A DNA stretch of 64,000 nt from IMG/VR virus record IMGVR_UViG_3300032288_004964, positions 124,001-188,000 of that record; one strand, 5' to 3'. The position numbers were made by a program, and so were the translations under genes. Shown piece by piece: positions 43,184 to 64,000 of this stretch; within the stretch, counting starts at the first letter, position 1, and each line of letters starts with the position of its first letter. The notes beneath the pieces are model-generated. The model saw only the letters and a list, made by a program, of their open reading frames with translations, was not told where the DNA came from and made no database searches.

Positions 43184-43211
43184 AATTAAATTAGAAATTA
43201 ATATATAGTTT

Positions 43212-44002: not shown

Positions 44003-44111
44003 CTTAAATGATTTTTTATTTTATATATAAATAAGAAGAATAGTTTGCTATTTTTAATACAAACAGAAGTGTGAAATAAATATATATAGATAATAAAATT
44101 AATTTAATTAG

Positions 44112-46871: not shown

Positions 46872-46914
46872 AGATTTTTAATTTTAATATATACATTAAA
46901 ATTATTAATAACTT

Positions 46915-48060
46915 ATGGCAGGATGTGGATCATCATTATTTGGAAACAGTAGTCAATTCATTAAAATAAATGGTGGTGACTTTGTAGCTATACAAGGTTC
47001 CGATACAAGAGAAAGGCTTATAACATCTGATTTAAGAATGCCTTATAAGCAAATTTTAAAAAGCAGAGTAATCTTAAAAGTAGGACAAACAAATTATTTA
47101 CTTAATCATTTAGGTCTTGGTGATAATGCTACTTTTCTTTGTCTTAGAGCTACTTATGACCCAAAATCAGTAAATGAAGAAGATAACTATATTAACTGGA
47201 GCTATTATGATGATCCAACTAGAATAAATACATTTGCTCAAATGATGGTTCTAACTGGAAATTCAACACATAGAATTCCTCAACTTTATTTAACAAATCC
47301 AAGTACTAAATATACTGTTTTTATTGATGTTATGGTTGCTGTTATTGATGAAGAATATTCATTCTTCGGTGATGTATTAAATCAATCAGGTACATCTTTC
47401 ACAGGCTTAGAATATACAGATATTAAATCACATATTATTGGAGAATCAATAGTAATTAATGATAAAAATTCACCACCTAGACCTTTAATTTATATACTAT
47501 TAAACAGTATAAATTCTATAGAGAAAAGTGGAACTATATTAATAATTGATAACACAACATATGGTACTTTATTTTTGCAGTTCCTAACTGAGAATGATGC
47601 TTTTCAAGCACATTCATTATTAAATTATATACTTGAAAATCCATCTGTTGATATTGATAGTTTAAGTCCGGTGGGTGATTTAGTTGATCCGGTTCTTCAT
47701 TTTTATAGTAATGTAGGAGCATCTGCTTCTTTAGACTATATTGCATTTAATGGTGATATATATGGTGTTCCTTATAATACTTCAGATGGTTTTACTTTTT
47801 CTACTACTATATCATTGGCACAATCTGGTGTTTCTGGTTCTATAACTAGATCTAGATTAATTGACTTATTAATTGACTACATAGAAGATAATAGAGATGG
47901 TTATATGAACATGAATACATATAATTTAATTATTACTGGAACTAGCGGTGTTGTTACTACAGTTTCAAATCCTGGTACATATTCATTAACATTTGACTTC
48001 TCTGATATAGCACAAAACTATTTAGATGGAGTTATAGTAGATTTAAATATAACAGCTTAA
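46915..48060 (+). CDS. Putative structural protein
   Basis: 381 aa; beta-rich; structural cluster. Confidence 0.5.
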   Translation: MAGCGSSLFGNSSQFIKINGGDFVAIQGSDTRERLITSDLRMPYKQILKSRVILKVGQTNYLLNHLGLGDNATFLCLRATYDPKSVNEEDNYINWSYYDDPTRINTFAQMMVLTGNSTHRIPQLYLTNPSTKYTVFIDVMVAVIDEEYSFFGDVLNQSGTSFTGLEYTDIKSHIIGESIVINDKNSPPRPLIYILLNSINSIEKSGTILIIDNTTYGTLFLQFLTENDAFQAHSLLNYILENPSVDIDSLSPVGDLVDPVLHFYSNVGASASLDYIAFNGDIYGVPYNTSDGFTFSTTISLAQSGVSGSITRSRLIDLLIDYIEDNRDGYMNMNTYNLIITGTSGVVTTVSNPGTYSLTFDFSDIAQNYLDGVIVDLNITA

Positions 48061-48076
48061 AAAATAAATAATAGAA

Positions 48077-50365
48077 ATGAGTTATAGTTACGATAGATTC
48101 TTAAGACCGATAACATCAACCGATAGAAATATACAAATCTTAGATAATACTGGTATTATTAAATATACTATTAATCCATTTTCTGTCGTTGAGTCGATGG
48201 TTTCTAATAATTTATTAAAAATTAATATAAAGGGTGCTAGAATTATAACTATAAACTTTTCTACATCCAATGAAGCTAAGTTAGCTTTACCTAGATTACA
48301 ACAGCAAATTGATACATTAACTCAGAAAGTACCACTTGTAATTGATAAAGATATAAAAAATTATATAGATAGTGTAGTTGGAAATACTGGCACAAGTGGT
48401 TCATCTGGATCATCTGGTACATCTGGTGTTGATGGTACTTTTTATGGGTCAAGTGGATCTTCTGGTGTAAATGGCACATCTGGTGTTTCTGGTGCTACTG
48501 GTGCTACTGGATCTAATGGATCATCTGGTACATCTGGTACATCTGGTATATCTGGTGGATCTTATGATTATAGTAATGGAATAACTTTAACTGGATTAAC
48601 TGTTAGTTTAGGTGGTACACTTAGTCAAACCGTGATATTAAATGGTGATCTAAATGATTTACTTTTCACAGGATTTGATAACTTGGTTTTTACTAGTTCT
48701 GTATTTGATGTTGTTTCTGATCTTATTAGTTTAGATTCAAATGATTCTACTCAAATATTATCTATTAATGATATTACAATAAATGCTGGTGGTCAAATAT
48801 CTTTAAGTGGTGATTCTGGATTGGTTTCCATTGGAAATACACAAGGTTTAGTTTATCAATCTGATTATAAATTAGGATTTGTAACACACTCATTAGTTGA
48901 TAAGGGTTATGTGGATTTCGCAATTGAAGGTGTGTCTAAATACAGAGGAACTTCTAGTACTCAAATTGTTGTACCTGAAGCTGGATATGTTGTAACATTT
49001 ACTACACAAACTAATTTAGCTTATACACCTGGTGAAACTATTGTAATGTATGATACCTATCCAAACCTATATATGATTGATGATTATGTAGAAGATGGTG
49101 TTAGTGGTAATATAATAGGTACAGTTGATTCATATAATATACTTACTGGTAGTATATCAGTTGTTGTTGATTATTCAGAATCTATTGGTAATACATATAG
49201 TTATTGGTATATAAATTTAAGTGGTAAAACTGGTGTTGGTTTAATTGGAGCTACTGGAGCTACAGGTTTCAGTGGTACTAATGGTACTTCTGGTACAAGT
49301 GGGTCATCTGGTACAAGTGGATCATCTGGTACAAGTGGATCATCTGGGACATCAGGTTCTAGTGGAACATATGGTTCTAGTGGATCATCTGGGACATCAG
49401 GTTCTTCTGGTCCTTCTGGTTTATCTGGTACTTCTGGTACATCCGGTACTTCTCAAAATGTTTCTGCTAGTTATATGAGAGGTTCTCGTTCTACTCAACA
49501 AACCACTAATTTAACTATTAATAGTTTAGTTGCCTTTACCCAAACTGATAATTCAACTGGATCTGATATATCATTGAACACATCAACTGGTCAAATTACA
49601 CTTGCTGCAAATAGAACTTATAGATTATTAGCTCAAGTACCAACTTGGGAAGGATTGAGTGGTGCTAGACCATCTTTTAGATGGTATGATGAAACGTCAG
49701 CCTCTTATATAGGTAGTTTATCAGCCGCTTATAATCCAGGTGATGCTGGTGCTTATGGTGCATTTGGTGGCACATCCGATGTTGTTATCACAACAACACA
49801 AACAACAGTTGTTTCTTTTAGAATAGTTAATGGTACTAACTTATCTGGACTAGGTGGTAACGGTGATTTTAGTACAGGTGGTTCTTATCCTTGGTTTGAT
49901 ATTGAAGTTATATCTGGATATGTACCAATAGTTAATGATACAAGTTTATCTTTATCAGAAACACTTACAGTTACTGGTACTGCTTCTTTTAATGGATTAA
50001 CTGTTTTACAAGAAGTATCTGAAGTTATAAATTCAACACCTGGGGCTACTGCATCAACTGTTATATATGACTTCTCAACAGGTTCTAATTGGTATCATTC
50101 ATCTGCTACTACTAACTATACTGCTAATTTTACAAATATTCCAACAGATAATAATAGAGCAACAACTGTTACTATAGTTATAAATCAAGGTTCAACTGCT
50201 TATATACCAACTGCTGTTCAAATAGGTGGTACTCCATCAACTGTTAAATGGGCTGGTGGTACTGCTTCTGGGAATGCTAATCAAGTCGATATAGTTGGAT
50301 TTACATTTATTAGAAGTGGTAATGCCTGGGCTCAAGTCTTAGGACAAATAAACACTTTTGATTAA
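48077..50365 (+). CDS. Collagen-like (Gly-Thr/Ser-Ser) fibre protein
   Basis: Two G-X-Y tracts (GTS/GSS/GAT); C-terminal VKWAGG..GNANQVDIVG..QVLGQ domain. Confidence 0.75.
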   Translation: MSYSYDRFLRPITSTDRNIQILDNTGIIKYTINPFSVVESMVSNNLLKINIKGARIITINFSTSNEAKLALPRLQQQIDTLTQKVPLVIDKDIKNYIDSVVGNTGTSGSSGSSGTSGVDGTFYGSSGSSGVNGTSGVSGATGATGSNGSSGTSGTSGISGGSYDYSNGITLTGLTVSLGGTLSQTVILNGDLNDLLFTGFDNLVFTSSVFDVVSDLISLDSNDSTQILSINDITINAGGQISLSGDSGLVSIGNTQGLVYQSDYKLGFVTHSLVDKGYVDFAIEGVSKYRGTSSTQIVVPEAGYVVTFTTQTNLAYTPGETIVMYDTYPNLYMIDDYVEDGVSGNIIGTVDSYNILTGSISVVVDYSESIGNTYSYWYINLSGKTGVGLIGATGATGFSGTNGTSGTSGSSGTSGSSGTSGSSGTSGSSGTYGSSGSSGTSGSSGPSGLSGTSGTSGTSQNVSASYMRGSRSTQQTTNLTINSLVAFTQTDNSTGSDISLNTSTGQITLAANRTYRLLAQVPTWEGLSGARPSFRWYDETSASYIGSLSAAYNPGDAGAYGAFGGTSDVVITTTQTTVVSFRIVNGTNLSGLGGNGDFSTGGSYPWFDIEVISGYVPIVNDTSLSLSETLTVTGTASFNGLTVLQEVSEVINSTPGATASTVIYDFSTGSNWYHSSATTNYTANFTNIPTDNNRATTVTIVINQGSTAYIPTAVQIGGTPSTVKWAGGTASGNANQVDIVGFTFIRSGNAWAQVLGQINTFD

Positions 50366-50366
50366 T

Positions 50367-52847
50367 ATGTTTAGTAGATTATCATCATTTTCAGGACCAT
50401 TATCGCCTGTTTTTAGACTACCAGGTGGATTTACACTTAATGGTTTAATTTTAAGATATGTTATAGGAGATACTAACTCTTATTCAGGAACTAGTAGTGT
50501 CATCGACTTACAAGGTAATTCTAATGGAACTTTATACAATGGACAAGATATTGTTGGTATTGGTCCAACATATTCACTTAATGGTTACTTAAATTTTGAT
50601 GGAGTCAATGATTATATTATGACAAATACATCACTTAATTCTAAATTGTCACCAGCAAATACATCAACAATAATATCACATTTTATTTGGATATATCCTC
50701 AGGATAATGGTGTTATTGTCACTGAACAAGGTGATACATCTTTAAATGGTGTTGGTTGGCATGATTCACAAATTGAAATAGTTTCAGGAACATTAAAGTT
50801 TGGTGTTTGGAATGGTATAATTATATCTTCGTCTATTTCAATATCTTTATATAATTGGTACTATGTTGGCTTAACTTATGATGGAATAACACTAAGAGGT
50901 TATGTAAATGGTCAACTTGCCGGATCTATTACTGGTAGTAGATCAACTCCTCAATCAGCTGGTAATGGACTACATTATGCTATTGGTGCTAATGATGGTA
51001 CAAGTTTAGGTGACGGTAGTTATGCTAAAATGAAACTTGGTGATTTTCATGTTTATAATACAGCTCTTAGTCAACAACAAATTCTTAATAATTACAATGC
51101 TACTAAAAATGATTATATTTATACAGGTAGTATGTCTATTTGGATTGATGCGAATGACCCAGCGAGTTTTTCAGGTGGTTCAATTAGTGATTTGAGTGGT
51201 AATGGTTATACACACTCTTTAGTTGCTACTTCATCTACAATATTTGGTTTCAAGTCTTTTAATTGCACAGCGGTGTCAAATAATTATATAAGAGTAAACG
51301 GAACAGGTCCATTATTACCTACATCAGGTTATACATATGTTGCTTGGGCAAGAATTTCAGCAGATTCTTCTACATATAGAACATTATATAGAAGTTCTCC
51401 AAATGATCATGCTCTTTTAGTTCAAATAAATACTGATAATTTAGGATTTTGGGATAATGATTCAAATTCTTTTAAAGATTCTGGTTATGATGTAAGCTCA
51501 ATTGAAGAAAAATGGGTTCAATATTCGGTAGTTGGTGATTCATCTAGTAGTATATTCTATATAAATGATGTAGAAGTTGGTGCAACCAATTCCGGTGCTA
51601 GTGGTAATAGACATGATTACTTTGGTGGTATTGATGGACAACCTTTTGGTTATGTTGGTAATATGATGTTATATAATAAAAAATTATCTCAATCTGAAAT
51701 TAAACAAAATTATGATGCTCTTAAAAATGTTTATAAGAATGGTGATTTTGTAATTAGTAATATAGGTATATCTTTACTACCGTCTAATGCTGGTAGTACT
51801 ATTTGGTCCGATTCAAAAGGCAATTTTAATGCCACAATGTCAGGATCGCCATCATATAATAATACTGGTTATACATTTAATGGAACTTCTCAGTATGGTA
51901 GAATTGTTAGTTCTACAGGTATTACCGATTTTACAAATACAAATAATTATACTATCGAGGTATGGACTAAACCATCTTCAGGACAACCAAATTCAACAAC
52001 AACCATTTTGGAAAAATGGAATTTAGGAAATTCATCAAATTATCCTTATACATTAAGATTTACTGAAGGTTCAAGTACTGCTTATTTTGCTTGTTATGAT
52101 GGAACTAATTTCCCTCAAGGTACTTTAACCGGAGTTTCAGTAGGTAACTGGTATCAATTAGTTGGTGTTTTTAATTTCACCACTGATGTTTTAACAGTTT
52201 ATAAAAATGGTATTTCTGCTGGAACTGCAAGTTTAGTTGGGGTTGGTGGTTTAAGTAATACAAGTCCTGTGGGAATTGCTCATAGAGTAAGTATTGACGG
52301 ATCATCTGCTGAGTTTATGTTTAAGGGTTCAATTGGTATTATAAGAATTTATAGTTCTGCTCTCAGCGCCTCTGATGTATCTAAAAACTTTGAGGCAAAT
52401 AGAAATATTTATGGAATTTCAGACTCGATCACTACAACTACTACGACTGTTGCTCCGACAACTACAACTACTACGACTGTTTTTCAAGGTGGTCCAATAA
52501 GTGAAATCTCCGTTAATCTTGGAATTAATGGTGTTGTTTATACACTAGCTGATGGACATGATTTTGAAAGTGGTCCTTTCGAACAAATGTTTTCAACAAC
52601 TACACTAAATATGTTTACTGCGTTAACCAATTATTTAGGTGATACACCTAATGCTGAATTTAATTTAGATATTACTCAAGTATTTGATAATCAAGGAAAT
52701 CTAGATGGTTATTCAATTAATTTATATCTAAGTACCCCAGGGAATGGATACAATGTTGGTGATATTATAACCATACCTGGAAGTGAAATTGGTGGAACCG
52801 ATAACACTGATGATGACTTAATAATAACTGTTACTTCAATATCATAG
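50367..52847 (+). CDS. Multi-LamG (concanavalin A-like) adhesin/fibre tip protein
   Basis: Three repeats of FDG..DY/FNG..Y...W..V...Y.NG...YN.ALS..I..NY; Thr-rich linker; start at MFSRLS (or 50358). Confidence 0.8.
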   Translation: MFSRLSSFSGPLSPVFRLPGGFTLNGLILRYVIGDTNSYSGTSSVIDLQGNSNGTLYNGQDIVGIGPTYSLNGYLNFDGVNDYIMTNTSLNSKLSPANTSTIISHFIWIYPQDNGVIVTEQGDTSLNGVGWHDSQIEIVSGTLKFGVWNGIIISSSISISLYNWYYVGLTYDGITLRGYVNGQLAGSITGSRSTPQSAGNGLHYAIGANDGTSLGDGSYAKMKLGDFHVYNTALSQQQILNNYNATKNDYIYTGSMSIWIDANDPASFSGGSISDLSGNGYTHSLVATSSTIFGFKSFNCTAVSNNYIRVNGTGPLLPTSGYTYVAWARISADSSTYRTLYRSSPNDHALLVQINTDNLGFWDNDSNSFKDSGYDVSSIEEKWVQYSVVGDSSSSIFYINDVEVGATNSGASGNRHDYFGGIDGQPFGYVGNMMLYNKKLSQSEIKQNYDALKNVYKNGDFVISNIGISLLPSNAGSTIWSDSKGNFNATMSGSPSYNNTGYTFNGTSQYGRIVSSTGITDFTNTNNYTIEVWTKPSSGQPNSTTTILEKWNLGNSSNYPYTLRFTEGSSTAYFACYDGTNFPQGTLTGVSVGNWYQLVGVFNFTTDVLTVYKNGISAGTASLVGVGGLSNTSPVGIAHRVSIDGSSAEFMFKGSIGIIRIYSSALSASDVSKNFEANRNIYGISDSITTTTTTVAPTTTTTTTVFQGGPISEISVNLGINGVVYTLADGHDFESGPFEQMFSTTTLNMFTALTNYLGDTPNAEFNLDITQVFDNQGNLDGYSINLYLSTPGNGYNVGDIITIPGSEIGGTDNTDDDLIITVTSIS

Positions 52848-52986
52848 GAACTGATGAATCTGTTAAATAAAAAATTTATTTTTTAATTGATACTTATAAT
52901 ATAATGATATAGCAATTGTCAAGTAGCAAAAAATAGAAAAAATTAATATTTGAAATATAATATATAATAAAAAATAACAATAAAAT

Positions 52987-53220
52987 ATGCAAATATCATT
53001 AACAAATCCGAAGAAAGTAGTTTTACAAGAAGAAAAAAGTAAAACAGTAACGACACTAACAGTATCACGAATTGTGGACTTACCGAAGAAGAAAATGGTT
53101 AGAGCTTTTGTAGAAGAATTAGACGAGCCTGTAGTATTATGGGAAGGCGCGGCTTATGATTCAATTGGTCAATGGACTGATGCAAATGTTGAAGCTAGAT
53201 TAGCTGAATTGTATTCATAA
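52987..53220 (+). CDS. Small hypothetical protein (possibly fibre-associated)
   Basis: 77 aa with a late box and its own terminator. Confidence 0.6.
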   Translation: MQISLTNPKKVVLQEEKSKTVTTLTVSRIVDLPKKKMVRAFVEELDEPVVLWEGAAYDSIGQWTDANVEARLAELYS

Positions 53221-53238
53221 TCTCTTTTGAAACTAATT

Positions 53239-53265
53239 AAAACCCTCTTAAAAAGAGGGTTTTTT
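53239..53265 (+). terminator. Intrinsic terminator
   Basis: AAAACCCTCTT-AAA-AAGAGGGTTTTTT. Confidence 0.8.
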
Positions 53266-53270
53266 ATTTT

Positions 53271-53297
53271 AAACTAAATTGTAATAAATCATATAAT
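53271..53297 (+). promoter_or_regulatory. AAACTA-N15-TATAAT putative promoter
   Basis: Same architecture at 27204-27230, 44020-44046(-), 56273-56299(-) and 20974-20999(-). Confidence 0.55.
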
Positions 53298-53313
53298 AAA
53301 TAAAACTTTTTTA

Positions 53314-54195
53314 ATGTATTCAATATTTCACATAGAAGGAGGAATTGGTAAGAATATTTTAGCAACCGCAGTTATTGATTCCCTCAAGAAAACAGACCCA
53401 GAAAGAAAAATCATTTTAGTTTCAGCTTGGCCTCAAGTTTGGTTTAACAACCCAAACATTGAACAAATATTCCCAATGGGTCAAGTCGCTAACTTTTATA
53501 AAAACTTTATCAAAGACCAAGATGTAAAAATATTCCGTGTTGATCCTTATCATACAGAAGATTATATCCTAAATAAAAAACATTTAATTGAAATTTGGTG
53601 TGATTTAGTTGGAGCTAAATATGATGGAGAACTACCTAAACTTTACTTTTCACCTTTAGAGTTGGAAGGAATTAGATCAAAAATTTTACAAGGAGTAAGT
53701 AAACCTATTTTTTTACTACACACAAATGGTGGTGGTTCTGGTCCTAAATCAAGACCTTATTCTTGGTATAGAGACATACCAATGCAAAATGCTGTAGATA
53801 TTGTTAACTACTTCAAAAATGATTATCATATCTATCAACTTGGATATCAAGGACAATCTTTAATACCAGGTTGTAATAAATTAACTTTAGAAACTAGAGA
53901 AATTTTAGCAGCTCCTCTTTTTTCTAAAAAGAGATTATTAATTGATTCTTTTTCTCAACATGCTTCAGTTGCACTTGGTATGCAATCAGTTGTTTGTTGG
54001 GTTGGAAATAAACCTGAGGTTTTAGGTTATGATAGTCATCTTAATATAAAACCTGTTGCTAAACCCGTATTTGACACTTACCACTCATCTTACTTAGATG
54101 ATTTTGATATTGGAGGTAATCCAGTTCAATTCCCTTATGATAAATTGAAAGTATTTGATTCAAACGAAATAATAAATAAATTATTAACATTATGA
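53314..54195 (+). CDS. Glycosyltransferase, GT9/heptosyltransferase-like (GT-B)
   Basis: GGIGKNILAT.VI..LK...P; F.NNPNI; LLIDSFSQHASVALG. Confidence 0.7.
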   Translation: MYSIFHIEGGIGKNILATAVIDSLKKTDPERKIILVSAWPQVWFNNPNIEQIFPMGQVANFYKNFIKDQDVKIFRVDPYHTEDYILNKKHLIEIWCDLVGAKYDGELPKLYFSPLELEGIRSKILQGVSKPIFLLHTNGGGSGPKSRPYSWYRDIPMQNAVDIVNYFKNDYHIYQLGYQGQSLIPGCNKLTLETREILAAPLFSKKRLLIDSFSQHASVALGMQSVVCWVGNKPEVLGYDSHLNIKPVAKPVFDTYHSSYLDDFDIGGNPVQFPYDKLKVFDSNEIINKLLTL

Positions 54196-54998
54196 GAAAA
54201 ATTCATTATATAGGTGGTCTACCGAGAAGTGGGTCAACTTTATTAACAAACATTCTTTTACAGAATCCAAAATTTGCTACAACAGCAACATCTTCTCTTT
54301 TAGACTTTCTCTTACAAGTAAGAGATAATTGGAATAAATTAGAAGGACATAAAGTTTATGAAGAAGGCCAGGATAAATGGGCAGTTATCAGAGCAATTAT
54401 GTATAACTATCACAAAACTGATAAAGAAGTTATCTTCGATAAAAACAGAGGTTGGTCTACACATATTGAATTTATGGAAAAAGCAACTGGTGAAGGAGTT
54501 AAAATAATTGCTTGTGTTAGAAATCTTGAAGATATCTGTTCTTCTTTTGAAAAACTATTTAGAAAGAATAGAGCTGATGGTGAAATACACGGTGAATTTT
54601 CTAATCCTAAAATGAAAAATAGAGAAGGTAGAGTTGGTGTTTGGACATCAGATGAAGGAGTTATAGGAAGACCTTATATTTCTTTATTAGATACAATCCA
54701 AAGAGGTTTAGGTGATAGAATATTATTCTTCCCATATGAAGAATGGTCATCTAATCCTGACTTCTGGTTTAAGAAATTATATGAGTTTGTAGGTGAAGAA
54801 TATTACCAACATGATTTTAATAATATCGAACAAGTTATTAGAGAAAATGATGCTGGTTATGGTTGGGGATCTGATTTGCATGAAATTAAAAATGGTAGAT
54901 TATTACCAGCTAAATCAGATGCTATTGAAATATTAGGTAGAGATTGGTTTGTTAAATTACATGACACAGAATTCTGGAAGACTAAGAAAAAGAAATAA
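54192..54998 (+). CDS. PAPS-dependent sulfotransferase
   Basis: 5'-PSB loop GLPRSGSTLL; 3'-PB IIACVRN..DI.SS; YEE...P. Confidence 0.85.
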   Translation: MRKIHYIGGLPRSGSTLLTNILLQNPKFATTATSSLLDFLLQVRDNWNKLEGHKVYEEGQDKWAVIRAIMYNYHKTDKEVIFDKNRGWSTHIEFMEKATGEGVKIIACVRNLEDICSSFEKLFRKNRADGEIHGEFSNPKMKNREGRVGVWTSDEGVIGRPYISLLDTIQRGLGDRILFFPYEEWSSNPDFWFKKLYEFVGEEYYQHDFNNIEQVIRENDAGYGWGSDLHEIKNGRLLPAKSDAIEILGRDWFVKLHDTEFWKTKKKK

Positions 54999-54999
54999 T

Positions 55000-55032
55000 A
55001 AAAAAACCTCTCAAATTTGAGAGGTTTTTTTT
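55000..55032. terminator. Bidirectional intrinsic terminator
   Basis: AAAAAACCTCTCAAATTTGAGAGGTTTTTT palindrome. Confidence 0.85.
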
Positions 55033-55237
55033 ATTCATCCATTTTAATAAATTTATACCAAAATCTTTCATGTATAAAGTAGATAATAGGTTTTAAGACT
55101 AACTCACTAACACCTAATAAAGAAGCAATTTTAAGAGGTGCCCCTAACAATGTAGCTGTTATAACTGTTGTTAAAGTTCCTAAAATTCTATATGTTATAG
55201 TTTTATAAAGGTGTCTCTTTATAGCTTTATCCTTCAT
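55031..55237 (-). CDS. DUF2061-like small membrane protein
   Basis: RHLYKTITYRILGT...K.IIYFIHER.W. Confidence 0.8.
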   Translation of the reverse strand: MKDKAIKRHLYKTITYRILGTLTTVITATLLGAPLKIASLLGVSELVLKPIIYFIHERFWYKFIKMDE

Positions 55238-55685
55238 TTACCATTAGATTTTTTATTACATCTTCTTGTATAGACTCGTGAACCATTGTTCTCCAAGAAT
55301 CATCACCATTCTTAATAGAATCTCTGATTTTTGTAGCTGAGATAAATGCGATGTCACCTGGAGGTGTAAACTCATTTATTTCATAACCAACACCTCTTCC
55401 ATAATTAACAGATTCAATATCAGGGATAATCATTACTTTAACATCATCATTTTTAGCAGCATGATACTTCTCAATCATTTCTACTGTTTGTTCAGTTGTA
55501 AAAGGATTCTTTTCATCTGGTTCGATGTCTCTAACCATAATTAAAGCTGGTATACCTGCATCTAATTTTTGTTGAATTAATTCAATATGTCCATAATGAT
55601 AAGGTTGGTATCTACCTACAAAGATAGCATACTTTTTATCTGGATTCTTAGTGGGTTCTCCACCGTGATTTACTTTTGACCACAT
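55227..55685 (-). CDS. HxGH nucleotidyltransferase (cytidylyltransferase-like)
   Basis: FVGRYQPYHYGH; NPF; YGRGVGY; ISATKIR. Confidence 0.8.
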   Translation of the reverse strand: MWSKVNHGGEPTKNPDKKYAIFVGRYQPYHYGHIELIQQKLDAGIPALIMVRDIEPDEKNPFTTEQTVEMIEKYHAAKNDDVKVMIIPDIESVNYGRGVGYEINEFTPPGDIAFISATKIRDSIKNGDDSWRTMVHESIQEDVIKNLMVNEG

Positions 55686-55686
55686 A

Positions 55687-56268
55687 TTATTTGTTATTTT
55701 TTAATATTAACTCAGTAAGAAAGTTTACATTTTTTTCTAAATCTTCTTCTGTGTTATTTTTTAGTACTGTTGCATTTTGAGGAGTTTCAAAAGGAGATGA
55801 GATTCCTGTAAATTCTTTAATTTCACCAGCTCTTGCTTTTTTGTAAAGACCTTTAGGGTCTCTAGTTTCACAAGTAGAAAGTTCAGCATCAATGAAAATT
55901 TCCATAAATCCTTCACCAATAATTTCTTTAGCTTGGTTTCTATTCTTTTCAAATGGAGAGATAAAAGAACAGATTACAATTAGACCAGCATCATTCATAA
56001 GTTTACAAACTTCTGAAACCCTTCTAATGTTTTCTACTCTTGCTTCTTCTGAGAATCCTAAATCTTTGTTAAGACCCATTCTAGTGTTATCACCATCTAA
56101 AATATAGGTGTGATATCCCAAACTGATTAGTTTTTCTTCAACTAAATTAGCAATAGTTGATTTTCCTGAACCGGATAATCCAGACATCCAAATGGTACAA
56201 GCCTTTTGATTTTTGATAGATTCACGGTTTTCTTTTGTTGTTTTAAAATTGTGCGTAGTTATATTCAT
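55687..56268 (-). CDS. cysC: Adenylyl-sulfate (APS) kinase
   Basis: GLSGSGKST; LDGD..R; R.ENIRR; FISP; RDPKGLY.KAR.GEI..FTGI. Confidence 0.95.
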   Translation of the reverse strand: MNITTHNFKTTKENRESIKNQKACTIWMSGLSGSGKSTIANLVEEKLISLGYHTYILDGDNTRMGLNKDLGFSEEARVENIRRVSEVCKLMNDAGLIVICSFISPFEKNRNQAKEIIGEGFMEIFIDAELSTCETRDPKGLYKKARAGEIKEFTGISSPFETPQNATVLKNNTEEDLEKNVNFLTELILKNNK

Positions 56269-56371
56269 ATGAATTATATTTTACAGAGTCTATTTGTTTT
56301 AAAAAATCACATAAAAGAATTTTTTTACATTATAATTTTAATATATACTCTATAAAAAATATTTTTTAACT

Positions 56372-59300
56372 ATGCCAACACAAAGTTTAGTACTTAGAGG
56401 TTTAATCGGAAGAAGACTAACCATCGAAGAAATGGATGGAAACTTCACATATTTAGAGTCATTAGCTCAAGAACAAGGAGATCAACCAAATCATCAAATT
56501 GCAATAGGAACAGGCACTGGTCTGACTTCATCTGAAAATTTTACATTTGATTATGAGTGTAATAATTTAATATCAGGTAATAATACCATTTGTTCTTGTT
56601 CATCAGAATCTAGTATCATTGGTGGTAATAACAATTGTGTTACTTGTTCTTATGAATCTAGTATCATTGGTGGTCATAACAATTGTGTTGTTTGTTCAGG
56701 TGGATCAACAATCATTGGTGGTTTTAATAACACGGTTACCTACTGTGCTGATTATTCTTCAATTGTTGGTGGTAGAAATAATACTATAAATGGTAGTTGT
56801 TATTATAATACTTATTACTCTTCTATAGTTGGTGGTGAGTATAATACTATTGGTTTAGGATCTTGTGATGCTAGTATAATAGGTGGTTCAGATAATTCTG
56901 TTGATTATTCTTGTAAAGCTGGTATCTTTTCTGGTGTTAGTAGTCATATATGTGATTATTCAGAAAGATCTACTATCTTAGGAGGTTCTCAAGATAGAAT
57001 ATCAAATGAATCTTGTAGATCTACTATTGTTGGTGGTTTTAGAAACTGTATTGTTGATGGTTCTTGTAATTCATCTGTTATGTCTGGATGTTGTAATGAT
57101 ATCTGTTATGGATCAGACAACTCTGTGATATCTGGTGGTTATTGTAATGAGATATGTTGTTACTCTTGTGAGTCTTCTATTATTGGTGGTATTCGTAATA
57201 CAATTAATTGTCAAACTTGTCAATCTACTATTGTTGGTGGGTATTGTAATAGAATTTCAAGCAATGAAGGTTCTGTGGTTTTGGGTGGTCGTTATAATGA
57301 TGTTTGTTGTAGTTCAAACTACACTGTAATATCAGGTTCTAATAATAAAATTTGTTGTGAATCTTGTAATTCATCTATTCTTGGTGGTAATTTTAATATA
57401 GTAGACGGATATTCTTGTAATTCATCTATTATCGGTGGTCAATCTAACTGCATTTGTGGTTCTAATTATGTATCTGGTCCTTATTCTTGTAAGTGTGATT
57501 ATGGTTCTTGTAATTCAGTTATTCTTGGTGGATGTTGTAATCAAATAATTTGTGATTCAGACAACACATCAATTATTGGTGGATGTTGTAATCAAGTTGT
57601 TGGTGATGGTGGTTCTGGAAGAAACTCTATTGTAGGTGGTGCTGATAACACAATTTGTTATTCAGATCACTCGGCAATTATTGGAGGTGAACAAAACAAA
57701 ATTTATGGAGAATCAGATTATTCTGTTATTATTGGTGGATGTTATGGTTTTATTTATGAAACACAATACTCTGCTATAATTGGTGGATGTTGTAATACAA
57801 TATGTATAGGTGGTAATAATGGCAATGGATATGGTGTTATTTTAGGTGGTGGTTCCAATACTTTAAATTGCTATTCTAATAATTCTGGAATTCTAGGTGG
57901 ATATTGTAATACTATAGATTGTTACTCAACTAAATCATCAATTATTGGAGGTGAATCAAATTTAATTATTACAAGTGGTCTTACTGCTAGTGATAATTAT
58001 GGTGTTTATAATGTTTGTCTTGGTGGTAACTCAATTATTGGTGGTCTTACAAATAGTATCATTGATTCTGAAAACTCAGTTATCTTAGGTGGTACTGGTT
58101 TAACATTAGCTACTCAAAGTAACACTGTTTTAGTTCCTCACTTAAAAATTAATAATTTAGATGTTTGTAACTCAGATGATAGAATATTAGTATCTGATGC
58201 TTTTGGTAATATTAATTATAGAGAAGCTTCTACATTAGGTGGAGGTGGTTCATTCTATTCTTGTTGTAATACATTGGATAATACTTCGGTTTCAAATATT
58301 ATAGGCGGTTGTTATAACACAATATGTAATTCTTTTGAGAGTACTATAATCGGTGGTGAAAATAACTATTTATGTGAAGTTGGATTAGGATCTACTATTG
58401 TAGGTGGTATTTGTAATACAATTAATAATGGCGTAGATGCTTCTGGTATTTTTGCTGGTAGATGTAATAAAATTTGTGGAAATAGTGATGGAAATTATTA
58501 TTCAGCTATTATTGGTGGTTATTGTAACTTAATATCAGATGGTAATGAAAGTTCTGTAATCTTAGGTGGTTGTCGTAACTGTATATGTGATTATTCTTAC
58601 AATTCTATGATATCATCTGGGTGTTGTAATTATATATGTGAGTCTGATAGAACATCTATTATAGCGGGGCGTTGTAATACAATTTGTTGTTCTTCAGAGG
58701 ATTCTGTAATTATGGGTGGTTGTTATAATAGAATTGATAGAAACTCTGATAGATCATCTATTGTTGGTGGTGGTTGGAACTCAATTTGTACATATTCTTC
58801 TAGATCAGGTATTCTTGCTGGTTCTGGTAATCATATTTATGATGGATCTTGTCATTCTACAATTGTAGGTGGTCATTGTAACCATATTTATAATTATTCT
58901 TGTCATTCTACAATTGTAGGTGGTGAATGTAACACATTATATAATGACGCTATTAACTCTACAATCAATGGTGGATTTAGAAACTGCTTAGATAGTGTTT
59001 ATAACTCATCAATCTTAGGTGGATATAGAAACTGTGCTCACTATACAATCAACTCAACAATTGTTGGTGGATGTAGAAATATGATATATTATGGTTCTAA
59101 TGAAGGTGCTATATTAGGTGGTGGTTGTAATTCTATTTCTGGTAGTTCTTATCAAGCATCAATTGTTGGTGGTAGATGTAATGAAATAAACAATCATTCT
59201 CATGACTCTTCAATAATTGGGGGTTATAATAACTCAATTTATAGTTGTTCGGAAAAATCTACAATTGTTGGTGGTTTTGATAACTGTATTTGTTGTTCAA

Positions 59301-61402
59301 ATAACTCTGGTATAATTGGTGGTTATAATAATGAGATTTTTGAATCAAGTAGATCTTTAATCTTAGGTGGTTCAAATATGACTCTTAATAATGAAGATGA
59401 TACAGTTTTAGTAAATCGTCTTAAAATTGATACTCTTCAAAATGAACCAGGTGATACTAGAATTGTTACTGCTGATTCTGATGGTAGAATTAGATACAGA
59501 ACAGTTTCTGGTTTAGTTCCAGAATTTGGAGGTATTGTAAATGGCGCTACTAATTCAATGACTGGATTTATGAATAGTATTTATAACTCTAATAATGGTT
59601 CAGTTGTTGGTGGTTCTTATAATGGTGTAACATCTTCAAATTCATCTTCAATAATTGGAGGTGATGCTGGTGTAATTAGTTGTTCACCTGAATCAAGTAT
59701 TATTGGAGGTCAATGTAACACTATATGTTGTTACTCTTGTGACTCATCAATTATAGGTGGTTGTAACAACCACCTAAATTGTAGTTCTAGTTTATCATCT
59801 ATAATTGGTGGTGGTTGTAACACTATAAATTGTTTTTCTATTAGCTCAGCAGTAATTGGTGGTTATCGTAACTTTACATGTAATTACGCAATTGAATCAT
59901 CTGTAATTGGTGGTAGATGTAATAGTGTTTATAACACCTCTTGTAAATCATCTGTAATTGGTGGTTACTATAACTGTATTTATAATGGATCTTGTGAATC
60001 ATCTATTATTGGAGGTCGTGATAACTGTATTTATAACGGAGCTTGTGATTCATCTATCATCGGTGGTGAATGGAACAGAGTTGCTTGGGGTACTTATAAC
60101 TCAACAGTTATTGGCGGTGATTGGAATAGAGTATTCGATTCTTGTGGGGCATCAGTAGTTGGTGGAGCTGGTAATAGAGTAAATGAAACTTATAGATCTG
60201 GTATTTTTGAAGGACATTGTAATCATATTTGTTGTTATTCTGATGATTCTACTATTGTAGGTGGTCACTATAACTGTATTGAGTATTATTCTTGCCAATC
60301 TTCTATAATTGGTGGATGTTGTAATGAAATCTGTTGTACTAATTACGCTTCTATTGTAGGTGGTGCTTGTAACCATATCTGTCAGCGTTCTTATTATTCA
60401 TCTATACTTGGTGGATGTTATAACTGCGTTGTTGATTATTCTTGTTATTCATCTATCTTAGGTGGTGGAAGAAACTGTATTTATAACTCTGATTATACAT
60501 CTATAATTGGTGGTAGATACACTTGTTTAGATAACTCTGATTACTCATCTGTAATTGGTGGATGTTGTAATGGTATGTATAATTCAAGCTACTCATCTGT
60601 AATTGGTGGATGTTGTAATAGACAAACATATTCCGATTTAGCATCTATTGTTGGTGGATATTGTAACTGTATCTGGTCAGGTGATTGCTCAAGTATCATT
60701 GGTGGTTATGGTAATCGATTATGTGGTGGTTATTACGGTGATGACTCAAGAGGATCTTCAATTTTCGGTGGTAATTATAACTGTATGTATAATGGTGTTT
60801 GTAGATCTTCAATTATTGGCGGTTATAGTAATGAAATAAAATGTTACTCTTGTGATTCATCAATAATTGGTGGTTGTAATAATGGAATTTGTTGTGCTTC
60901 TTGTCAATCTTCTATTATTGGTGGTTGTAACAATTATATGTGCTGTTCTTGTAACTCAGTTATATTAGGTGGACAAGATTTAGATGTTTGTAATATAGAC
61001 AATACAGTATTCATGAATGGTACAACTTGGTTAAAACAAACAGTTGAGACATCATTTGAAACTACTGTAAGTGCTGCCACTTTTAGTGTTAACTTTTTAG
61101 AGGGTGGTATTAAATACTTATCATCATTAAGTAATGACTTCCAAGTTGACTTTACAAACTTTCCTGATCCTACTATTGCCAACTCTGTTATAACTTATAC
61201 ATTAATCTTAAATCAAGGTGTTACTCCTTATATGATTACTGGATTAACTATAAATGGTGGTGGTACTCAAACAATTAAGTGGAATGGTGGAAATGTTCCT
61301 ACCGGTAACGCTAATCAAGTTGATACAATAGGTTTAATGTTTGTTTATAATAGTACAGGTTTATTAAGTCAAGTATTGGGTCAAGTTGGAACATTTGCAT
61401 AA
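56372..61402 (+). CDS. Giant cysteine-rich repeat fibre protein (S-x-I-x-GG-x-x-N beta-solenoid)
   Basis: Dozens of 16-17-aa repeats; N-terminal LT..EMDGNF; C-terminal IKWNGG..GNANQVD..QVLGQ domain. Confidence 0.8.
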   Translation: MPTQSLVLRGLIGRRLTIEEMDGNFTYLESLAQEQGDQPNHQIAIGTGTGLTSSENFTFDYECNNLISGNNTICSCSSESSIIGGNNNCVTCSYESSIIGGHNNCVVCSGGSTIIGGFNNTVTYCADYSSIVGGRNNTINGSCYYNTYYSSIVGGEYNTIGLGSCDASIIGGSDNSVDYSCKAGIFSGVSSHICDYSERSTILGGSQDRISNESCRSTIVGGFRNCIVDGSCNSSVMSGCCNDICYGSDNSVISGGYCNEICCYSCESSIIGGIRNTINCQTCQSTIVGGYCNRISSNEGSVVLGGRYNDVCCSSNYTVISGSNNKICCESCNSSILGGNFNIVDGYSCNSSIIGGQSNCICGSNYVSGPYSCKCDYGSCNSVILGGCCNQIICDSDNTSIIGGCCNQVVGDGGSGRNSIVGGADNTICYSDHSAIIGGEQNKIYGESDYSVIIGGCYGFIYETQYSAIIGGCCNTICIGGNNGNGYGVILGGGSNTLNCYSNNSGILGGYCNTIDCYSTKSSIIGGESNLIITSGLTASDNYGVYNVCLGGNSIIGGLTNSIIDSENSVILGGTGLTLATQSNTVLVPHLKINNLDVCNSDDRILVSDAFGNINYREASTLGGGGSFYSCCNTLDNTSVSNIIGGCYNTICNSFESTIIGGENNYLCEVGLGSTIVGGICNTINNGVDASGIFAGRCNKICGNSDGNYYSAIIGGYCNLISDGNESSVILGGCRNCICDYSYNSMISSGCCNYICESDRTSIIAGRCNTICCSSEDSVIMGGCYNRIDRNSDRSSIVGGGWNSICTYSSRSGILAGSGNHIYDGSCHSTIVGGHCNHIYNYSCHSTIVGGECNTLYNDAINSTINGGFRNCLDSVYNSSILGGYRNCAHYTINSTIVGGCRNMIYYGSNEGAILGGGCNSISGSSYQASIVGGRCNEINNHSHDSSIIGGYNNSIYSCSEKSTIVGGFDNCICCSNNSGIIGGYNNEIFESSRSLILGGSNMTLNNEDDTVLVNRLKIDTLQNEPGDTRIVTADSDGRIRYRTVSGLVPEFGGIVNGATNSMTGFMNSIYNSNNGSVVGGSYNGVTSSNSSSIIGGDAGVISCSPESSIIGGQCNTICCYSCDSSIIGGCNNHLNCSSSLSSIIGGGCNTINCFSISSAVIGGYRNFTCNYAIESSVIGGRCNSVYNTSCKSSVIGGYYNCIYNGSCESSIIGGRDNCIYNGACDSSIIGGEWNRVAWGTYNSTVIGGDWNRVFDSCGASVVGGAGNRVNETYRSGIFEGHCNHICCYSDDSTIVGGHYNCIEYYSCQSSIIGGCCNEICCTNYASIVGGACNHICQRSYYSSILGGCYNCVVDYSCYSSILGGGRNCIYNSDYTSIIGGRYTCLDNSDYSSVIGGCCNGMYNSSYSSVIGGCCNRQTYSDLASIVGGYCNCIWSGDCSSIIGGYGNRLCGGYYGDDSRGSSIFGGNYNCMYNGVCRSSIIGGYSNEIKCYSCDSSIIGGCNNGICCASCQSSIIGGCNNYMCCSCNSVILGGQDLDVCNIDNTVFMNGTTWLKQTVETSFETTVSAATFSVNFLEGGIKYLSSLSNDFQVDFTNFPDPTIANSVITYTLILNQGVTPYMITGLTINGGGTQTIKWNGGNVPTGNANQVDTIGLMFVYNSTGLLSQVLGQVGTFA

Positions 61403-61419
61403 AAAAAATTAAGAAATAG

Positions 61420-64000
61420 ATGTTAAGTAAACTATCAACGCATTTAGGACCAGGTTCTCTCTTTTCAGGAGATGAACCACTAGTATTGGAATTTAGTAAT
61501 TCAACTTGGATAAGTACAAATGTTGGTACTTATTCATTAGTTGATGCTTGGAATGAATTTTTTGTAACCATAGAAACACCATTCAAAGATGTAAGTATTG
61601 ATGGTAATAAAATTTCACTAATTGGTGGTAAAGATTTAGAATTAAAAACTAGTTGTTTTAGTAGTAGTGACTTAGTTTCAATTAAAGATAATTCTAGAAT
61701 AATTACAACATTAGGTACTTATTCATTTGATGATTGTTCATTATTAACAGATGCTACCTTAAAAGGAGTTACTTATTCGTATGGTGGATCTTTTAGAGAT
61801 AATGTGAGTTTAACAACTATAATTCTTCCTAATTTACAAGAGATTTTAGGTGATGGTTATTTCTTTTATAATTGTGGATCTGTTAGTAACTTCAATTTAC
61901 CTTTACTTAATAGTATATCAGGTGTTTCTAACTTTTATAATTGTAATAGTATGTCAACTTTAAATTTACCTGTTTGTACTACTTTAGGTGATACAGTACT
62001 TAATAATGATAACTTTGATTCTATTACTGGTAAAACAATAGATTTGACAGTAACTCCTGAATTACTTACTTGTAATGGTGGTACTCCAGATGTTGATATA
62101 CAATATCTACAATCTAATAACACAGTAACTATTCATATACCAACTTCAATTACTTCATTTACTCCAACATCAGCTACTTTCTCAGGTACAACTGTTAGTG
62201 TTGTGGGTAAAGGATTCTACGCCATTGATTCAGTAAAAATAGGTGGAGTTGAAGTTGCGACTTATTCACTTGATAGTTTTACTAATTTAAGTTTAGTTAC
62301 AGGTACTGTTTCAGATGGTTCTGTTTCAATTACTGGTACTTATGGTTCAGCTTCCAAATCTGGATTTGAATGGGATGCTACCGTTAAGTTTAGTTATATT
62401 GCCACTCCTTTAAATGTTTTACCAAATACTTGGACTGATTTATCGTCTTACTATAAAGATTTAGAAATTAAATCAGGCGTATCACTTGATACACTATATT
62501 CAGTTTTATTTGATGGTAGTAATTCAGGATATGGAACTTCAAGTCAAATGACTGTAAAATACACAAATGGATTTACAATAGAAACTTGGGTTAATTTCTC
62601 ATCATTAACATCTGCTAATTATATAATGCAGTTTGTTGATCAAGATTATACAAATACTAATCCAGATTTAACTCTACTTACTATTGATAATGATTTAAGA
62701 ATTCAATCAAGTAATTCTGTTAGTTTTTCTACTAATATAACTGCTAATAAATTCATCAAGGCTGTTGTTACATATGATTCATCAAATGGTGAAACTAAAA
62801 CATATATAAATGGTCAATTAACAAATACTAGTACACTTAATTTATCCACAAGCTATAAGAAAACAATTGGTAAACTTTTTGTTGGTAATATAGGATCTAA
62901 TCAACCTATGAGAATAGGCATGTTAAACTTTGTAAATTATATACAAGATTCAACAACTATTCTTAATAATTATAACAATGAAAGAAACACTTATGATGAA
63001 GCTAAAGGAAGTTTCTTATTTAATTCATCAAGTAGTCAATACTTATCATCTAGCTCACCTGATTATGTAATTGGTACAAATAGCTTTACTTTAGAAGCAT
63101 TTGTTAAAACAACATCTCAAAGCGGTTATGATGGTGTGATTTCAATGTTAGATAACAATGCTCCATTTAATGGTGTTTCTATTAATATTTTTGATGGTAA
63201 TTTTGACTTCTATTCTAAAGGTGGTCAATATACTTCATATACTGCTTCTAATGATACATGGTACCATGTTGCTATAGCAAGAGATAATGGAACTATAAGT
63301 TATTTTGCTAATGGTAGATTGGTAGCTCAATACTCTGATTCTTATAATTATACTCTTCAAGATTTAGTTATAGGTAGATATTATACAGATCTTAATGACC
63401 ACTATATAGATGGTGTTATTGCACAACCTAGATTAACAATAGGCACTGCATTATATAATGGTACATTTAGTGTAACTCCTCCATTAACAAGCGGTTCTAA
63501 TACTAAATTATTATTATTAGATGCTTATAATAACCAATTATTAGATTCTTCTGGACTTACACACTCTGTTATCTCTAATAATAATGTTGGTTGGACAAGT
63601 AGTTTACCTTCAACTATAGGAAGTACTTATGTACAAGATGCTCTTCAGTTTTATGTAGATGCTTCATTAAATACATCTTATCCTGGTTCAGGTACAATTT
63701 GGTATGATATATCAGGAAACTCAAGAGATCTTTCTTGGGGTTATGGATTAACTTATGATTCTGCAAATGGTGGTAATATTCATTTTGATGGTACTAATAG
63801 AGCACTAAGTGGTTCTAACTATACAATTAACTTCTCTAATGGAATTACGGTTGAGGCGGTTGCTAAATATCATTCAGGTTTTTATGGTGGTGTATTTGCA
63901 TTCAATGGTGGTGGTGACTATATTAATGTTCAATTTATGTCTTCTGGTACACAACTTAGATTTGAGCTTGATGCGGGTCAATCCTTATACACAACTGGAG
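61420..64000 (+). CDS. Adhesin/fibre tip protein: BspA-like LRR, IPT/TIG and LamG domains; 3' partial (absent from the ORF track)
   Basis: ATG 61420 (MLSKLSTHLGP), frame open to window end; F.NC..L....LP repeats; ITSFTPTS...G..VSVVGKGF; FTIETWV/FTLEAFV...WYHVA. Confidence 0.8.
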   Translation, partial: MLSKLSTHLGPGSLFSGDEPLVLEFSNSTWISTNVGTYSLVDAWNEFFVTIETPFKDVSIDGNKISLIGGKDLELKTSCFSSSDLVSIKDNSRIITTLGTYSFDDCSLLTDATLKGVTYSYGGSFRDNVSLTTIILPNLQEILGDGYFFYNCGSVSNFNLPLLNSISGVSNFYNCNSMSTLNLPVCTTLGDTVLNNDNFDSITGKTIDLTVTPELLTCNGGTPDVDIQYLQSNNTVTIHIPTSITSFTPTSATFSGTTVSVVGKGFYAIDSVKIGGVEVATYSLDSFTNLSLVTGTVSDGSVSITGTYGSASKSGFEWDATVKFSYIATPLNVLPNTWTDLSSYYKDLEIKSGVSLDTLYSVLFDGSNSGYGTSSQMTVKYTNGFTIETWVNFSSLTSANYIMQFVDQDYTNTNPDLTLLTIDNDLRIQSSNSVSFSTNITANKFIKAVVTYDSSNGETKTYINGQLTNTSTLNLSTSYKKTIGKLFVGNIGSNQPMRIGMLNFVNYIQDSTTILNNYNNERNTYDEAKGSFLFNSSSSQYLSSSSPDYVIGTNSFTLEAFVKTTSQSGYDGVISMLDNNAPFNGVSINIFDGNFDFYSKGGQYTSYTASNDTWYHVAIARDNGTISYFANGRLVAQYSDSYNYTLQDLVIGRYYTDLNDHYIDGVIAQPRLTIGTALYNGTFSVTPPLTSGSNTKLLLLDAYNNQLLDSSGLTHSVISNNNVGWTSSLPSTIGSTYVQDALQFYVDASLNTSYPGSGTIWYDISGNSRDLSWGYGLTYDSANGGNIHFDGTNRALSGSNYTINFSNGITVEAVAKYHSGFYGGVFAFNGGGDYINVQFMSSGTQLRFELDAGQSLYTTG

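What the first reader, a model, noticed from the sequence alone, without database searches (positions are those of the whole stretch)
48077..64000. Two paralogous fibre-plus-tip pairs with matching coupling modules
The collagen-like fibre (48077) and the Cys-rich fibre (56372) have unrelated shafts but homologous ~100-aa C-termini (L(Q/K)(E/Q)..E...DF.N.P...T..(I/L)NQG.T.Y...KW.GG...GNANQVD..G......QVLGQ..TF). Each is immediately followed by a LamG protein with a matching N-terminus (MFSRLSSFSGP / MLSKLSTHLGP). Inference: a plug-and-socket interface that lets shafts and receptor-binding tips be swapped, analogous to gp37/gp38.
Basis: partly seen in the sequence, partly recalled or inferred. 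Interest (0 to 1): 0.65.

Follow-up and report, generated by a model that had tools for sequence, protein, structure and literature searches.

The report
Conserved phage fibre-to-tip connector
Two tail-fibre genes of a 385-kb jumbo phage end in the same ~130-residue knob, and each is followed by a lectin-like tip gene starting with a matching short peptide; the same arrangement recurs in thousands of environmental phage fibres and probably joins interchangeable host-binding tips to fibre shafts, though binding itself is not yet shown.

Summary
The collagen-like fibre (48077-50365) and the Cys-rich fibre (56372-61402) share only their last ~135 residues (38% identity, E 1e-17). Each is followed, after 1 nt and 17 nt, by a Laminin_G_3 protein whose first ~15 residues match the other's.

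The pairing is a widespread rule, not a local curiosity:
- A profile of the C-terminal module finds 6,046 protein clusters.
- In 212 of 212 homologues examined, the module ends 0-3 residues from the C-terminus.
- In about 100 loci from cyanomyoviruses, roseobacter podoviruses, an actinophage and jumbo-phage relatives, the next gene starts within about 20 bp and opens with a related Ser/Gly-rich peptide.
- Module and peptide stay 60-80% identical while shafts and tip payloads (LamG, SPRY, RCC1, YHYH, glycine-rich, DUF7483) are exchanged.
- Some marine podoviruses also carry two tandem pairs.

The module folds confidently (pLDDT 94.6) as a beta-sandwich knob. It has no Pfam family and no solved relative.

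Physical binding was not demonstrated: the one complex prediction gave no verdict. Two close relatives lack the tip gene.

Verdict: this is most likely a conserved fibre-tip junction that works like gp37/gp38 but is not a member of that family.

The parts
48077..50365 (+). Fibre 1, 762 aa: N-terminal region conserved in relatives, collagen-like G-x-y runs (aa 102-162 and 388-459), C-terminal module
49943..50365 (+). C-terminal module of fibre 1 (aa 623-762, the 'socket'): predicted beta-sandwich knob ending at the stop codon
50367..52847 (+). Tip 1, 826 aa from ATG 50367: N-terminal peptide followed by three Laminin_G_3 stretches and a Thr-rich linker
50367..50426 (+). N-terminal peptide of tip 1 (the 'plug', first ~20 aa, MFSRLSSFSGPLS...)
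53239..53263 (.). Bidirectional terminator-like hairpin closing the fibre 1 / tip 1 unit
56372..61402 (+). Fibre 2, 1676 aa: 8.2% Cys, 68 repeats of 16-17 aa, C-terminal module
60980..61402 (+). C-terminal module of fibre 2 (aa 1537-1676, the 'socket')
61420..64000 (+). Tip 2, cut by the window end (956 aa in the genome, to window-equivalent 64290): N-terminal peptide, BspA-type LRR, Laminin_G_3 domains
61420..61479 (+). N-terminal peptide of tip 2 (the 'plug', MLSKLSTHLGPGS...)

Best explanation
The shared ~125-140-residue C-terminal module is a conserved distal-end knob of trimeric phage fibres. The 15-20-residue N-terminal peptide of the protein encoded immediately downstream is its docking partner. 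The fibre's N-terminus anchors it to the virion. The shaft (collagen-like or Cys-rich repeats) is a spacer. The knob at the free C-terminus holds the tip protein, whose LamG, LRR or other binding domains contact the host surface. Because the knob and peptide are kept while shafts and payloads are exchanged, the junction lets phages swap receptor-binding tips. Shown: the homology, the strict terminal position, the adjacency, the conservation across phage groups, the mosaic pattern and a confident beta-sandwich fold. Inferred: the direct contact, its stoichiometry, and that the tips bind host receptors.
For: The two modules are homologous at E 1e-17. A profile finds 6,046 clusters at E<=1e-3. 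In 212 of 212 homologues the last module ends 0-3 aa from the C-terminus, in hosts of 155-2982 aa whose shafts carry different Pfam families. In about 100 loci the next gene starts -1 to about +20 bp later and opens with a related peptide. The core pattern occurs in 90 of 105 downstream genes against 10 of 612 control ORFs. The carriers are unrelated virion types: T4-like cyanomyoviruses, roseobacter and freshwater podoviruses, an actinophage and jumbo phages. The module is therefore the only constant neighbour of the peptide. Among jumbo-phage relatives the module is 61-78% identical and the peptide 60-85%, while shafts are 8-54% and payloads fall to 6-7%. In 63 non-redundant podovirus pairs the module is 67% identical, the peptide 61% and the payload 24%, and this holds when payloads are unrelated. 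Payloads are binding-type domains: LamG, SPRY, RCC1, YHYH, Gly_rich_2, DUF7483. S-PM2 p177 and p176 are both annotated as virion structural proteins. Tandem double pairs occur in podovirus loci, and there the two fibres share an N-terminal motif. The module model has pLDDT 94.6. Its best solved match is the end of the triple beta-helix plus C-terminal knob of the trimeric Pa223 spike, Z 8.4.
Against: No direct evidence of contact exists, because the complex prediction returned no verdict. The fibre 1 homologue in L012 and the fibre 2 homologue in L022 have no adjacent tip gene. Nine fibres carry extra internal module copies followed by more shaft, so the module can act as a plain structural node. 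In about half of the podovirus tips the first ATG lies 8-20 codons upstream of the peptide. The fold matches are only moderate, Z 5.6-8.4.
Confidence: 0.6

Rival explanations
1. The module is only a C-terminal trimerisation and folding nucleus, or terminal knob, for diverse trimeric shafts, as gC1q is for collagen stalks. The downstream protein is a separate fibre that attaches elsewhere on the virion through its N-terminal peptide. Adjacency would then reflect a co-inherited adsorption cassette.
For: Collagen stalk plus C-terminal jelly-roll-like knob is the C1q/TNF layout, and the best fold match includes a TNF-like trimeric knob. Internal copies exist within single fibres. Some fibres lack an adjacent tip gene.
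Against: The peptide travels with the module across phages whose tails and baseplates are unrelated, so no other constant attachment partner is apparent. There is one peptide gene per module gene, always immediately downstream, including in double-pair loci. A folding-nucleus role does not exclude a docking role.
Confidence: 0.2
2. The downstream proteins are fibre-assembly chaperones, like Tfa or T4 gp38. They bind the module transiently during folding and are not part of the mature virion.
For: In many phages the gene after a fibre gene encodes its chaperone, and start and stop are tightly coupled here.
Against: The proteins are 200-1400 aa and made of lectin-like or adhesin-type domains. 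The S-PM2 homologue p176 is annotated as a virion structural protein. The scans of the window's tips and of ten relatives' tips listed no chaperone family.
Confidence: 0.08
3. The similarities are compositional or due to chance, with no functional link.
For: The N-terminal match in the window is only 11 residues, and BLAST does not report it.
Against: The modules match at E 1e-17, thousands of homologues exist, and about 100 independent loci show the same adjacency.
Confidence: 0.01

Closest known systems
T2/T6/S16-type long tail fibre tip: gp37 distal fibre plus gp38 adhesin
   Same: A separate adhesin is encoded directly after the distal fibre gene. It sits on the fibre's C-terminal end through its own N-terminal part and is exchanged modularly between phages (abstracts of PMC3157838 and PMC12032242, as listed). 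Several relatives' tips carry glycine-rich domains, and one is annotated as a gp38 adhesin.
   Different: No tip scanned returned a gp38 family. The attachment element here is a ~15-20-residue peptide, which I compare from memory with gp38's larger attachment domain. The window's payloads are LamG/LRR. The module family spans myo-, podo- and jumbo phages of cyanobacteria, roseobacters and actinobacteria.
T4 gp10-like XD domains of branched receptor-binding complexes (CBA120 TSP4/TSP2, G7C gp66)
   Same: A small trimeric beta-sandwich domain in one receptor-binding protein holds another one (PMC8825819). The module's fold matches TSP4 residues 79-180, T4 gp9, CpaA and StcE at Z 4.6-5.7.
   Different: The matched domain is XD1, described as a spacer; the docking domains are XD2 and XD3. 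Those domains lie near the N-terminus and create branches at the baseplate. Here the module is at the extreme C-terminus and extends the fibre. No sequence relation was found.
Pa223 gp52 capsid spike and C1q/TNF-type terminal knobs
   Same: It is the best solved fold match: Z 8.4 over 121 residues, covering the end of a triple beta-helix and the C-terminal knob of a homotrimer. Collagen stalk plus globular C-terminal head resembles C1q.
   Different: Only 7% identity. No partner protein is known for the gp52 knob. The Caprin-2 C1q domain matches only at Z 2.6.
Tail fibre assembly proteins (Tfa-type chaperones)
   Same: Encoded immediately after the fibre gene and act on its C-terminal end (my own knowledge).
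   Different: The downstream proteins here are large, multi-domain and lectin-like. The S-PM2 homologue is annotated as structural.

Membership tests
gp38 adhesin (Pfam GP38) | Match to the gp38 family profile | tested here: not met
   Pfam scans of both window tips and ten relatives' tips list no gp38 family.
gp38 adhesin (Pfam GP38) | Adhesin bound to the tip of the distal fibre in the virion | not testable with these tools
   Only adjacency and the S-PM2 'virion structural protein' annotations are available. The complex prediction gave no verdict.
T4 gp10-like XD docking domains | Fold of the XD2/XD3 jelly-roll domains that bind partner trimers | tested here: inconclusive
   The match is to the XD1 region (TSP4 79-180, Z 5.7) and to gp9, CpaA and StcE, not to XD2/XD3.
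T4 gp10-like XD docking domains | Position near the N-terminus or baseplate end, creating branches | tested here: not met
   The module ends 0-3 residues from the C-terminus in 212 of 212 homologues.
C1q/TNF-like trimeric knob | Jelly-roll fold of the globular head | tested here: inconclusive
   The Pa223 gp52 match covers the end of its beta-helix and its TNF-like knob, Z 8.4 at 7% identity. The C1q domain 4oul matches at Z 2.6.
C1q/TNF-like trimeric knob | Homotrimer | not tested
   Only a monomer was modelled. Trimer formation is inferred from the collagen repeats.
Collagen triple-helix repeat (PF01391) | Profile match above the curated cut-off, with G-x-y runs | tested here: met
   Fibre 1 scores 52.8 bits against a cut-off of 27.2 and has 7, 13 and 24 triplets.
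Laminin_G_3 (PF13385) | Profile match above the curated cut-off | tested here: met
   Tip 1 scores 127.4 bits (3 stretches) and tip 2 scores 83.9 bits (2 stretches), against a cut-off of 27.6.
Tail fibre assembly chaperone (Tfa-type) | Small protein matching a chaperone family profile | tested here: not met
   The Pfam and PHROG scans list no such family. The tips are 826 and 956 aa.
C-terminal intramolecular chaperone (Peptidase_S74) | Profile match | tested here: not met
   Pfam finds only Collagen in fibre 1 and nothing in fibre 2. The model's listed secondary-structure elements are all beta strands.

The most novel reading that the evidence does not exclude
The module and peptide form a near-universal, self-contained fibre-tip connector of aquatic tailed phages (over 6,000 clusters). 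The tip's N-terminal peptide would complete or clamp the trimeric knob at the fibre's free C-terminus. Any shaft carrying the knob could then accept any tip carrying the peptide. That would explain rapid host-range turnover in cyanophages and roseophages and give a portable handle for retargeting laboratory phages.
Probability: 0.4. Interest if true: 0.75.

Novelty: new variant of a known kind. Interest (0 to 1): 0.55.

Why it matters
Receptor-binding proteins of marine and freshwater phages are mostly unannotated. The module has no Pfam family. Two of its three PHROG matches (phrog_5906, the best, and phrog_29506) are families of unknown function; the third, phrog_9017, is labelled only 'tail fiber protein'. 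It has no solved relative, yet it marks the distal end of thousands of fibres, and the gene after it is then the likely host-recognition protein. If binding is confirmed, this gives three things: a simple rule for finding adhesins in metagenomic phages, an explanation for how tips are exchanged between unrelated shafts and virion types, and a defined junction for swapping tips in culturable model phages such as S-PM2, S-H38 and CRP-3.

Tried and rejected
- Complex prediction: three copies of the fibre 1 module with three copies of the first 40 residues of tip 1 scored ipSAE 0.00 and 0.01, and the controls were not run. The tool's verdict is 'no answer', so this counts neither for nor against binding.
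- Fold of tip 1's first 260 residues from a 7-row alignment gave pLDDT 45.5 and is uninformative.
- Profile search of solved structures found nothing better than E 0.3.
- A third plug-like motif at genome position 225980 (minus strand) is internal to a 1380-aa ORF and was rejected.
- My first loose motif pattern was unspecific (71 of 612 controls) and was replaced.
- Programmed read-through or frameshift fusing fibre and tip was rejected: in the window the two tips lie in different frames relative to their fibres (coordinates), and the gaps across loci are variable.
- No natural module-then-peptide fusion protein was seen among the 150 best profile hits.
- Papers on S-PM2, phiTE and Pa223 describe neither the module nor its partner.
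- L014 and L015 are weak matches followed by a subtilase-like gene and were not counted as family members.
- The reads tools were not used.

Full report
**Setting.** The window is bases 124001-188000 of a 385,333-bp IMG/VR virus record, estimated 95% complete, with about 28% G+C. It is a tailed phage. It encodes a UvsX-like recombinase and a further tail-fibre-like protein, and the proteins studied here match tail-fibre PHROGs. No tRNA gene lies in the window.

**The observation.** The region holds four plus-strand genes:
- fibre 1, 48077-50365, 762 aa;
- tip 1, 826 aa from ATG 50367;
- fibre 2, 56372-61402, 1676 aa;
- tip 2, from 61420, cut by the window end, 956 aa in the genome.

Fibre 1 has collagen-like G-x-y runs and matches Pfam Collagen. 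Fibre 2 is 8.2% cysteine and is made of 68 repeats of 16-17 residues.

BLASTP finds a single significant similarity between the fibres. Residues 628-761 of fibre 1 align with 1538-1675 of fibre 2 at 38% identity, E 1e-17.

Both tips match Laminin_G_3, and tip 2 also has a BspA-type LRR region. The tips share a short N-terminal peptide (MFSRLSSFSGP / MLSKLSTHLGP). BLAST does not report it, and otherwise the tips share only weak LamG-level similarity.

Tip 1 starts one base after the fibre's TAA, and tip 2 starts 17 bases after. No terminator-like site was reported at either fibre-tip junction. A terminator-like hairpin follows tip 1 at 53239-53263.

The own genome has exactly two modules. Under the stricter core pattern, four of its 377 ORFs match, two of them the tips. 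The third hit of the earlier scan is internal to a long ORF.

**The module is a large family with a fixed position.**
- It has no Pfam family.
- It matches phrog_5906 (unknown function) and phrog_9017 ('tail fiber protein') only weakly.
- It has no sequence relative among solved structures.
- A word-index search found 79 homologues of 420-1198 aa whose shafts carry different Pfam families or none.
- A profile search of 1.84 billion representatives found 6,046 clusters at E<=1e-3 and 4,402 at E<=1e-10.
- Structure searches find the fold only in tailed-phage fibre proteins, all uncharacterised.

**The pairing is conserved.** In cultured phages the module sits at the end of a fibre-like protein, and the next gene begins 4-200 bp later. 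These phages are Actinomycetia phage DSL-LC01, Synechococcus phages S-H38, S-BM3, S-CREM1 and S-PM2, Roseobacter phages CRP-3 and CRP-738, and a freshwater podovirus. In each, the next gene opens with a related Ser/Gly-rich peptide such as MPIIASFSG..., MPFLASFGGGSARGF... or MPIFATSTG....

IMG/VR relatives of fibre 1 (L007-L011, and the more distant L013) are followed after -1 to 2 bp by MLSRLSSFSGPLS-type LamG proteins. The same holds for two metagenomic contigs.

In 81 loci of the CRP-3 class, every resolvable downstream gene carries the peptide. About half of them carry it behind a short conserved leader.

A core pattern occurs in 90 of 105 downstream genes against 10 of 612 other ORFs in the same loci. 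Several of those ten belong to second pairs.

Loci L066, L087/L088 and L101/L102 carry two tandem fibre-plus-tip pairs, the same layout as the window. In L087/L088 the two fibres share an N-terminal motif, which places the virion anchor at the N-terminus and the module at the distal end.

There are two exceptions. The fibre 1 homologue in L012 and the fibre 2 homologue in L022 have no adjacent tip gene.

**Mosaic structure.**

| Comparison | Module identity | Peptide identity | Shaft identity | Payload identity |
|---|---|---|---|---|
| Window and jumbo-phage relatives | 61-78% | 60-85% | 8-54% | as low as 6-7% |
| 63 non-redundant podovirus pairs (means) | 67% | 61% | not measured | 24% |

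In the podovirus set, module and peptide stay at 67% and 61% even when the payloads are unrelated.

Payloads include Laminin_G_3, SPRY, RCC1, YHYH, Gly_rich_2, DUF7483 and CBM_4_9, and no Pfam family covers the peptide. The junction is thus the conserved element, while shafts and tips are exchanged around it.

**Structure.** The module folds with pLDDT 94.6 as an all-beta sandwich preceded by about 28 extended residues.

The best solved match is the Pa223 capsid spike gp52, Z 8.4 over 121 residues. The matched part is the end of a triple beta-helix plus the C-terminal TNF-like knob of a homotrimer.

Weaker matches (Z 4.6-7.4) are a Klebsiella phage KP1 baseplate protein, CBA120 TSP4 residues 79-180, CpaA and StcE. 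T4 gp9 and gp10 appear only in the Foldseek list. This set corresponds to the XD1 domain, which is described as a spacer rather than as the XD2/XD3 docking domains. These scores are in the range where only a common arrangement may be shared, so I do not claim membership.

**Mechanism.** The most likely reading is that the module is the distal knob of a trimeric fibre. The N-terminal peptide of the downstream protein would dock on it, so the lectin-like tip becomes the host-binding end. The supporting argument has four parts:
- The peptide and module are inherited together across phages with unrelated tails, so the module is the only constant candidate partner.
- The module is more conserved than the shaft, which does not suit a receptor-binding surface.
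- The payloads are diverse binding-type domains.
- In S-PM2 both proteins are annotated as virion structural proteins.

Direct contact is inferred, not shown. The one complex prediction returned no verdict, and the fold of the tip's N-terminus was of low confidence.

The main rival is that the module is only a trimerisation nucleus or knob and the tip attaches elsewhere. The internal copies and the tip-less relatives fit that view. A transient chaperone role for the tip is less likely given its size, domains and the S-PM2 annotation.

**Comparison and novelty.** Functionally this resembles the gp37/gp38 arrangement, and more loosely the gp10-like anchor-branch systems. It fails the tests for membership of either. 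I found no paper describing the module or the pairing, though the search is limited to the held library. I rate it a new variant of a known kind: a previously undescribed, very widespread fibre-tip junction whose binding step still needs an experiment.

Noticed in passing
window 53314-56268: Sulfation-type genes lie between the two fibre-tip pairs: a sulfotransferase (54192-54998, Sulfotransfer_3/1), an APS kinase (55687-56268, minus strand, E 2e-65), a cytidylyltransferase-like protein (55227-55685, minus strand) and an unassigned 293-aa ORF (53314-54195). They suggest phage-encoded PAPS supply and sulfation of a fibre or a host surface molecule.
   Followed up: partly
L022 and L007 (IMGVR_UViG_3300032321_002024, 262 kb): The closest relative keeps the Cys-rich fibre 2 homologue (81% identical module) but has no tip gene after it. 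The next ORF corresponds to the gene that follows tip 2 in the window's genome. Its fibre 1 homologue has a 1275-aa tip ending in a Gly_rich_2 domain.
   Followed up: partly
L012 (IMGVR_UViG_3300042878_001826): The fibre 1 homologue is followed directly by the MRRILF... protein that in L010/L011 comes after the LamG tip, so the tip gene is absent there.
   Followed up: no
P0084-P0089, P0055, P0102, P0216: These fibres carry two or three copies of the module, internal as well as terminal. In P0084 the copies are separated by long repeat regions of a recurring unit.
   Followed up: partly
L066, L087, L088, L101, L102: These marine podovirus loci hold two tandem fibre-module plus peptide-tip pairs. 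In L087/L088 the two fibres share an N-terminal motif (MAFVVADRVKETTTTTGTG-like).
   Followed up: yes
L024-L103, about half of the loci: The first ATG of the tip gene lies 8-20 codons before the peptide, giving a conserved leader (..PKKxPLYAP) ahead of ML(A/S)TFGGGS. It is unclear whether translation starts at the upstream or the internal Met.
   Followed up: no
window 1-1608: An ORF open at the window start (462 aa from its first ATG at 220) matches several tail-fibre PHROGs, including the long tail fibre distal subunit. It is a third fibre type without the module.
   Followed up: no
window 38033-48060: Three large ORFs just upstream of fibre 1 (1716, 919 and 381 aa) have no Pfam or PHROG match. 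They may be baseplate or fibre-anchor proteins.
   Followed up: no
window 61642-62010 (tip 2, aa 75-197): A BspA-type leucine-rich repeat region (LRR_5, E 2e-10) precedes the LamG domains of tip 2. Tip 1 has none.
   Followed up: no
window 58091-58210 and 59459-59575 (fibre 2, aa ~574-613 and ~1030-1068): A ~40-residue non-repeat segment (..TVLV..LKI..L.......RI...D..G.I.YR..) occurs twice and splits the Cys-rich repeats into three blocks.
   Followed up: no
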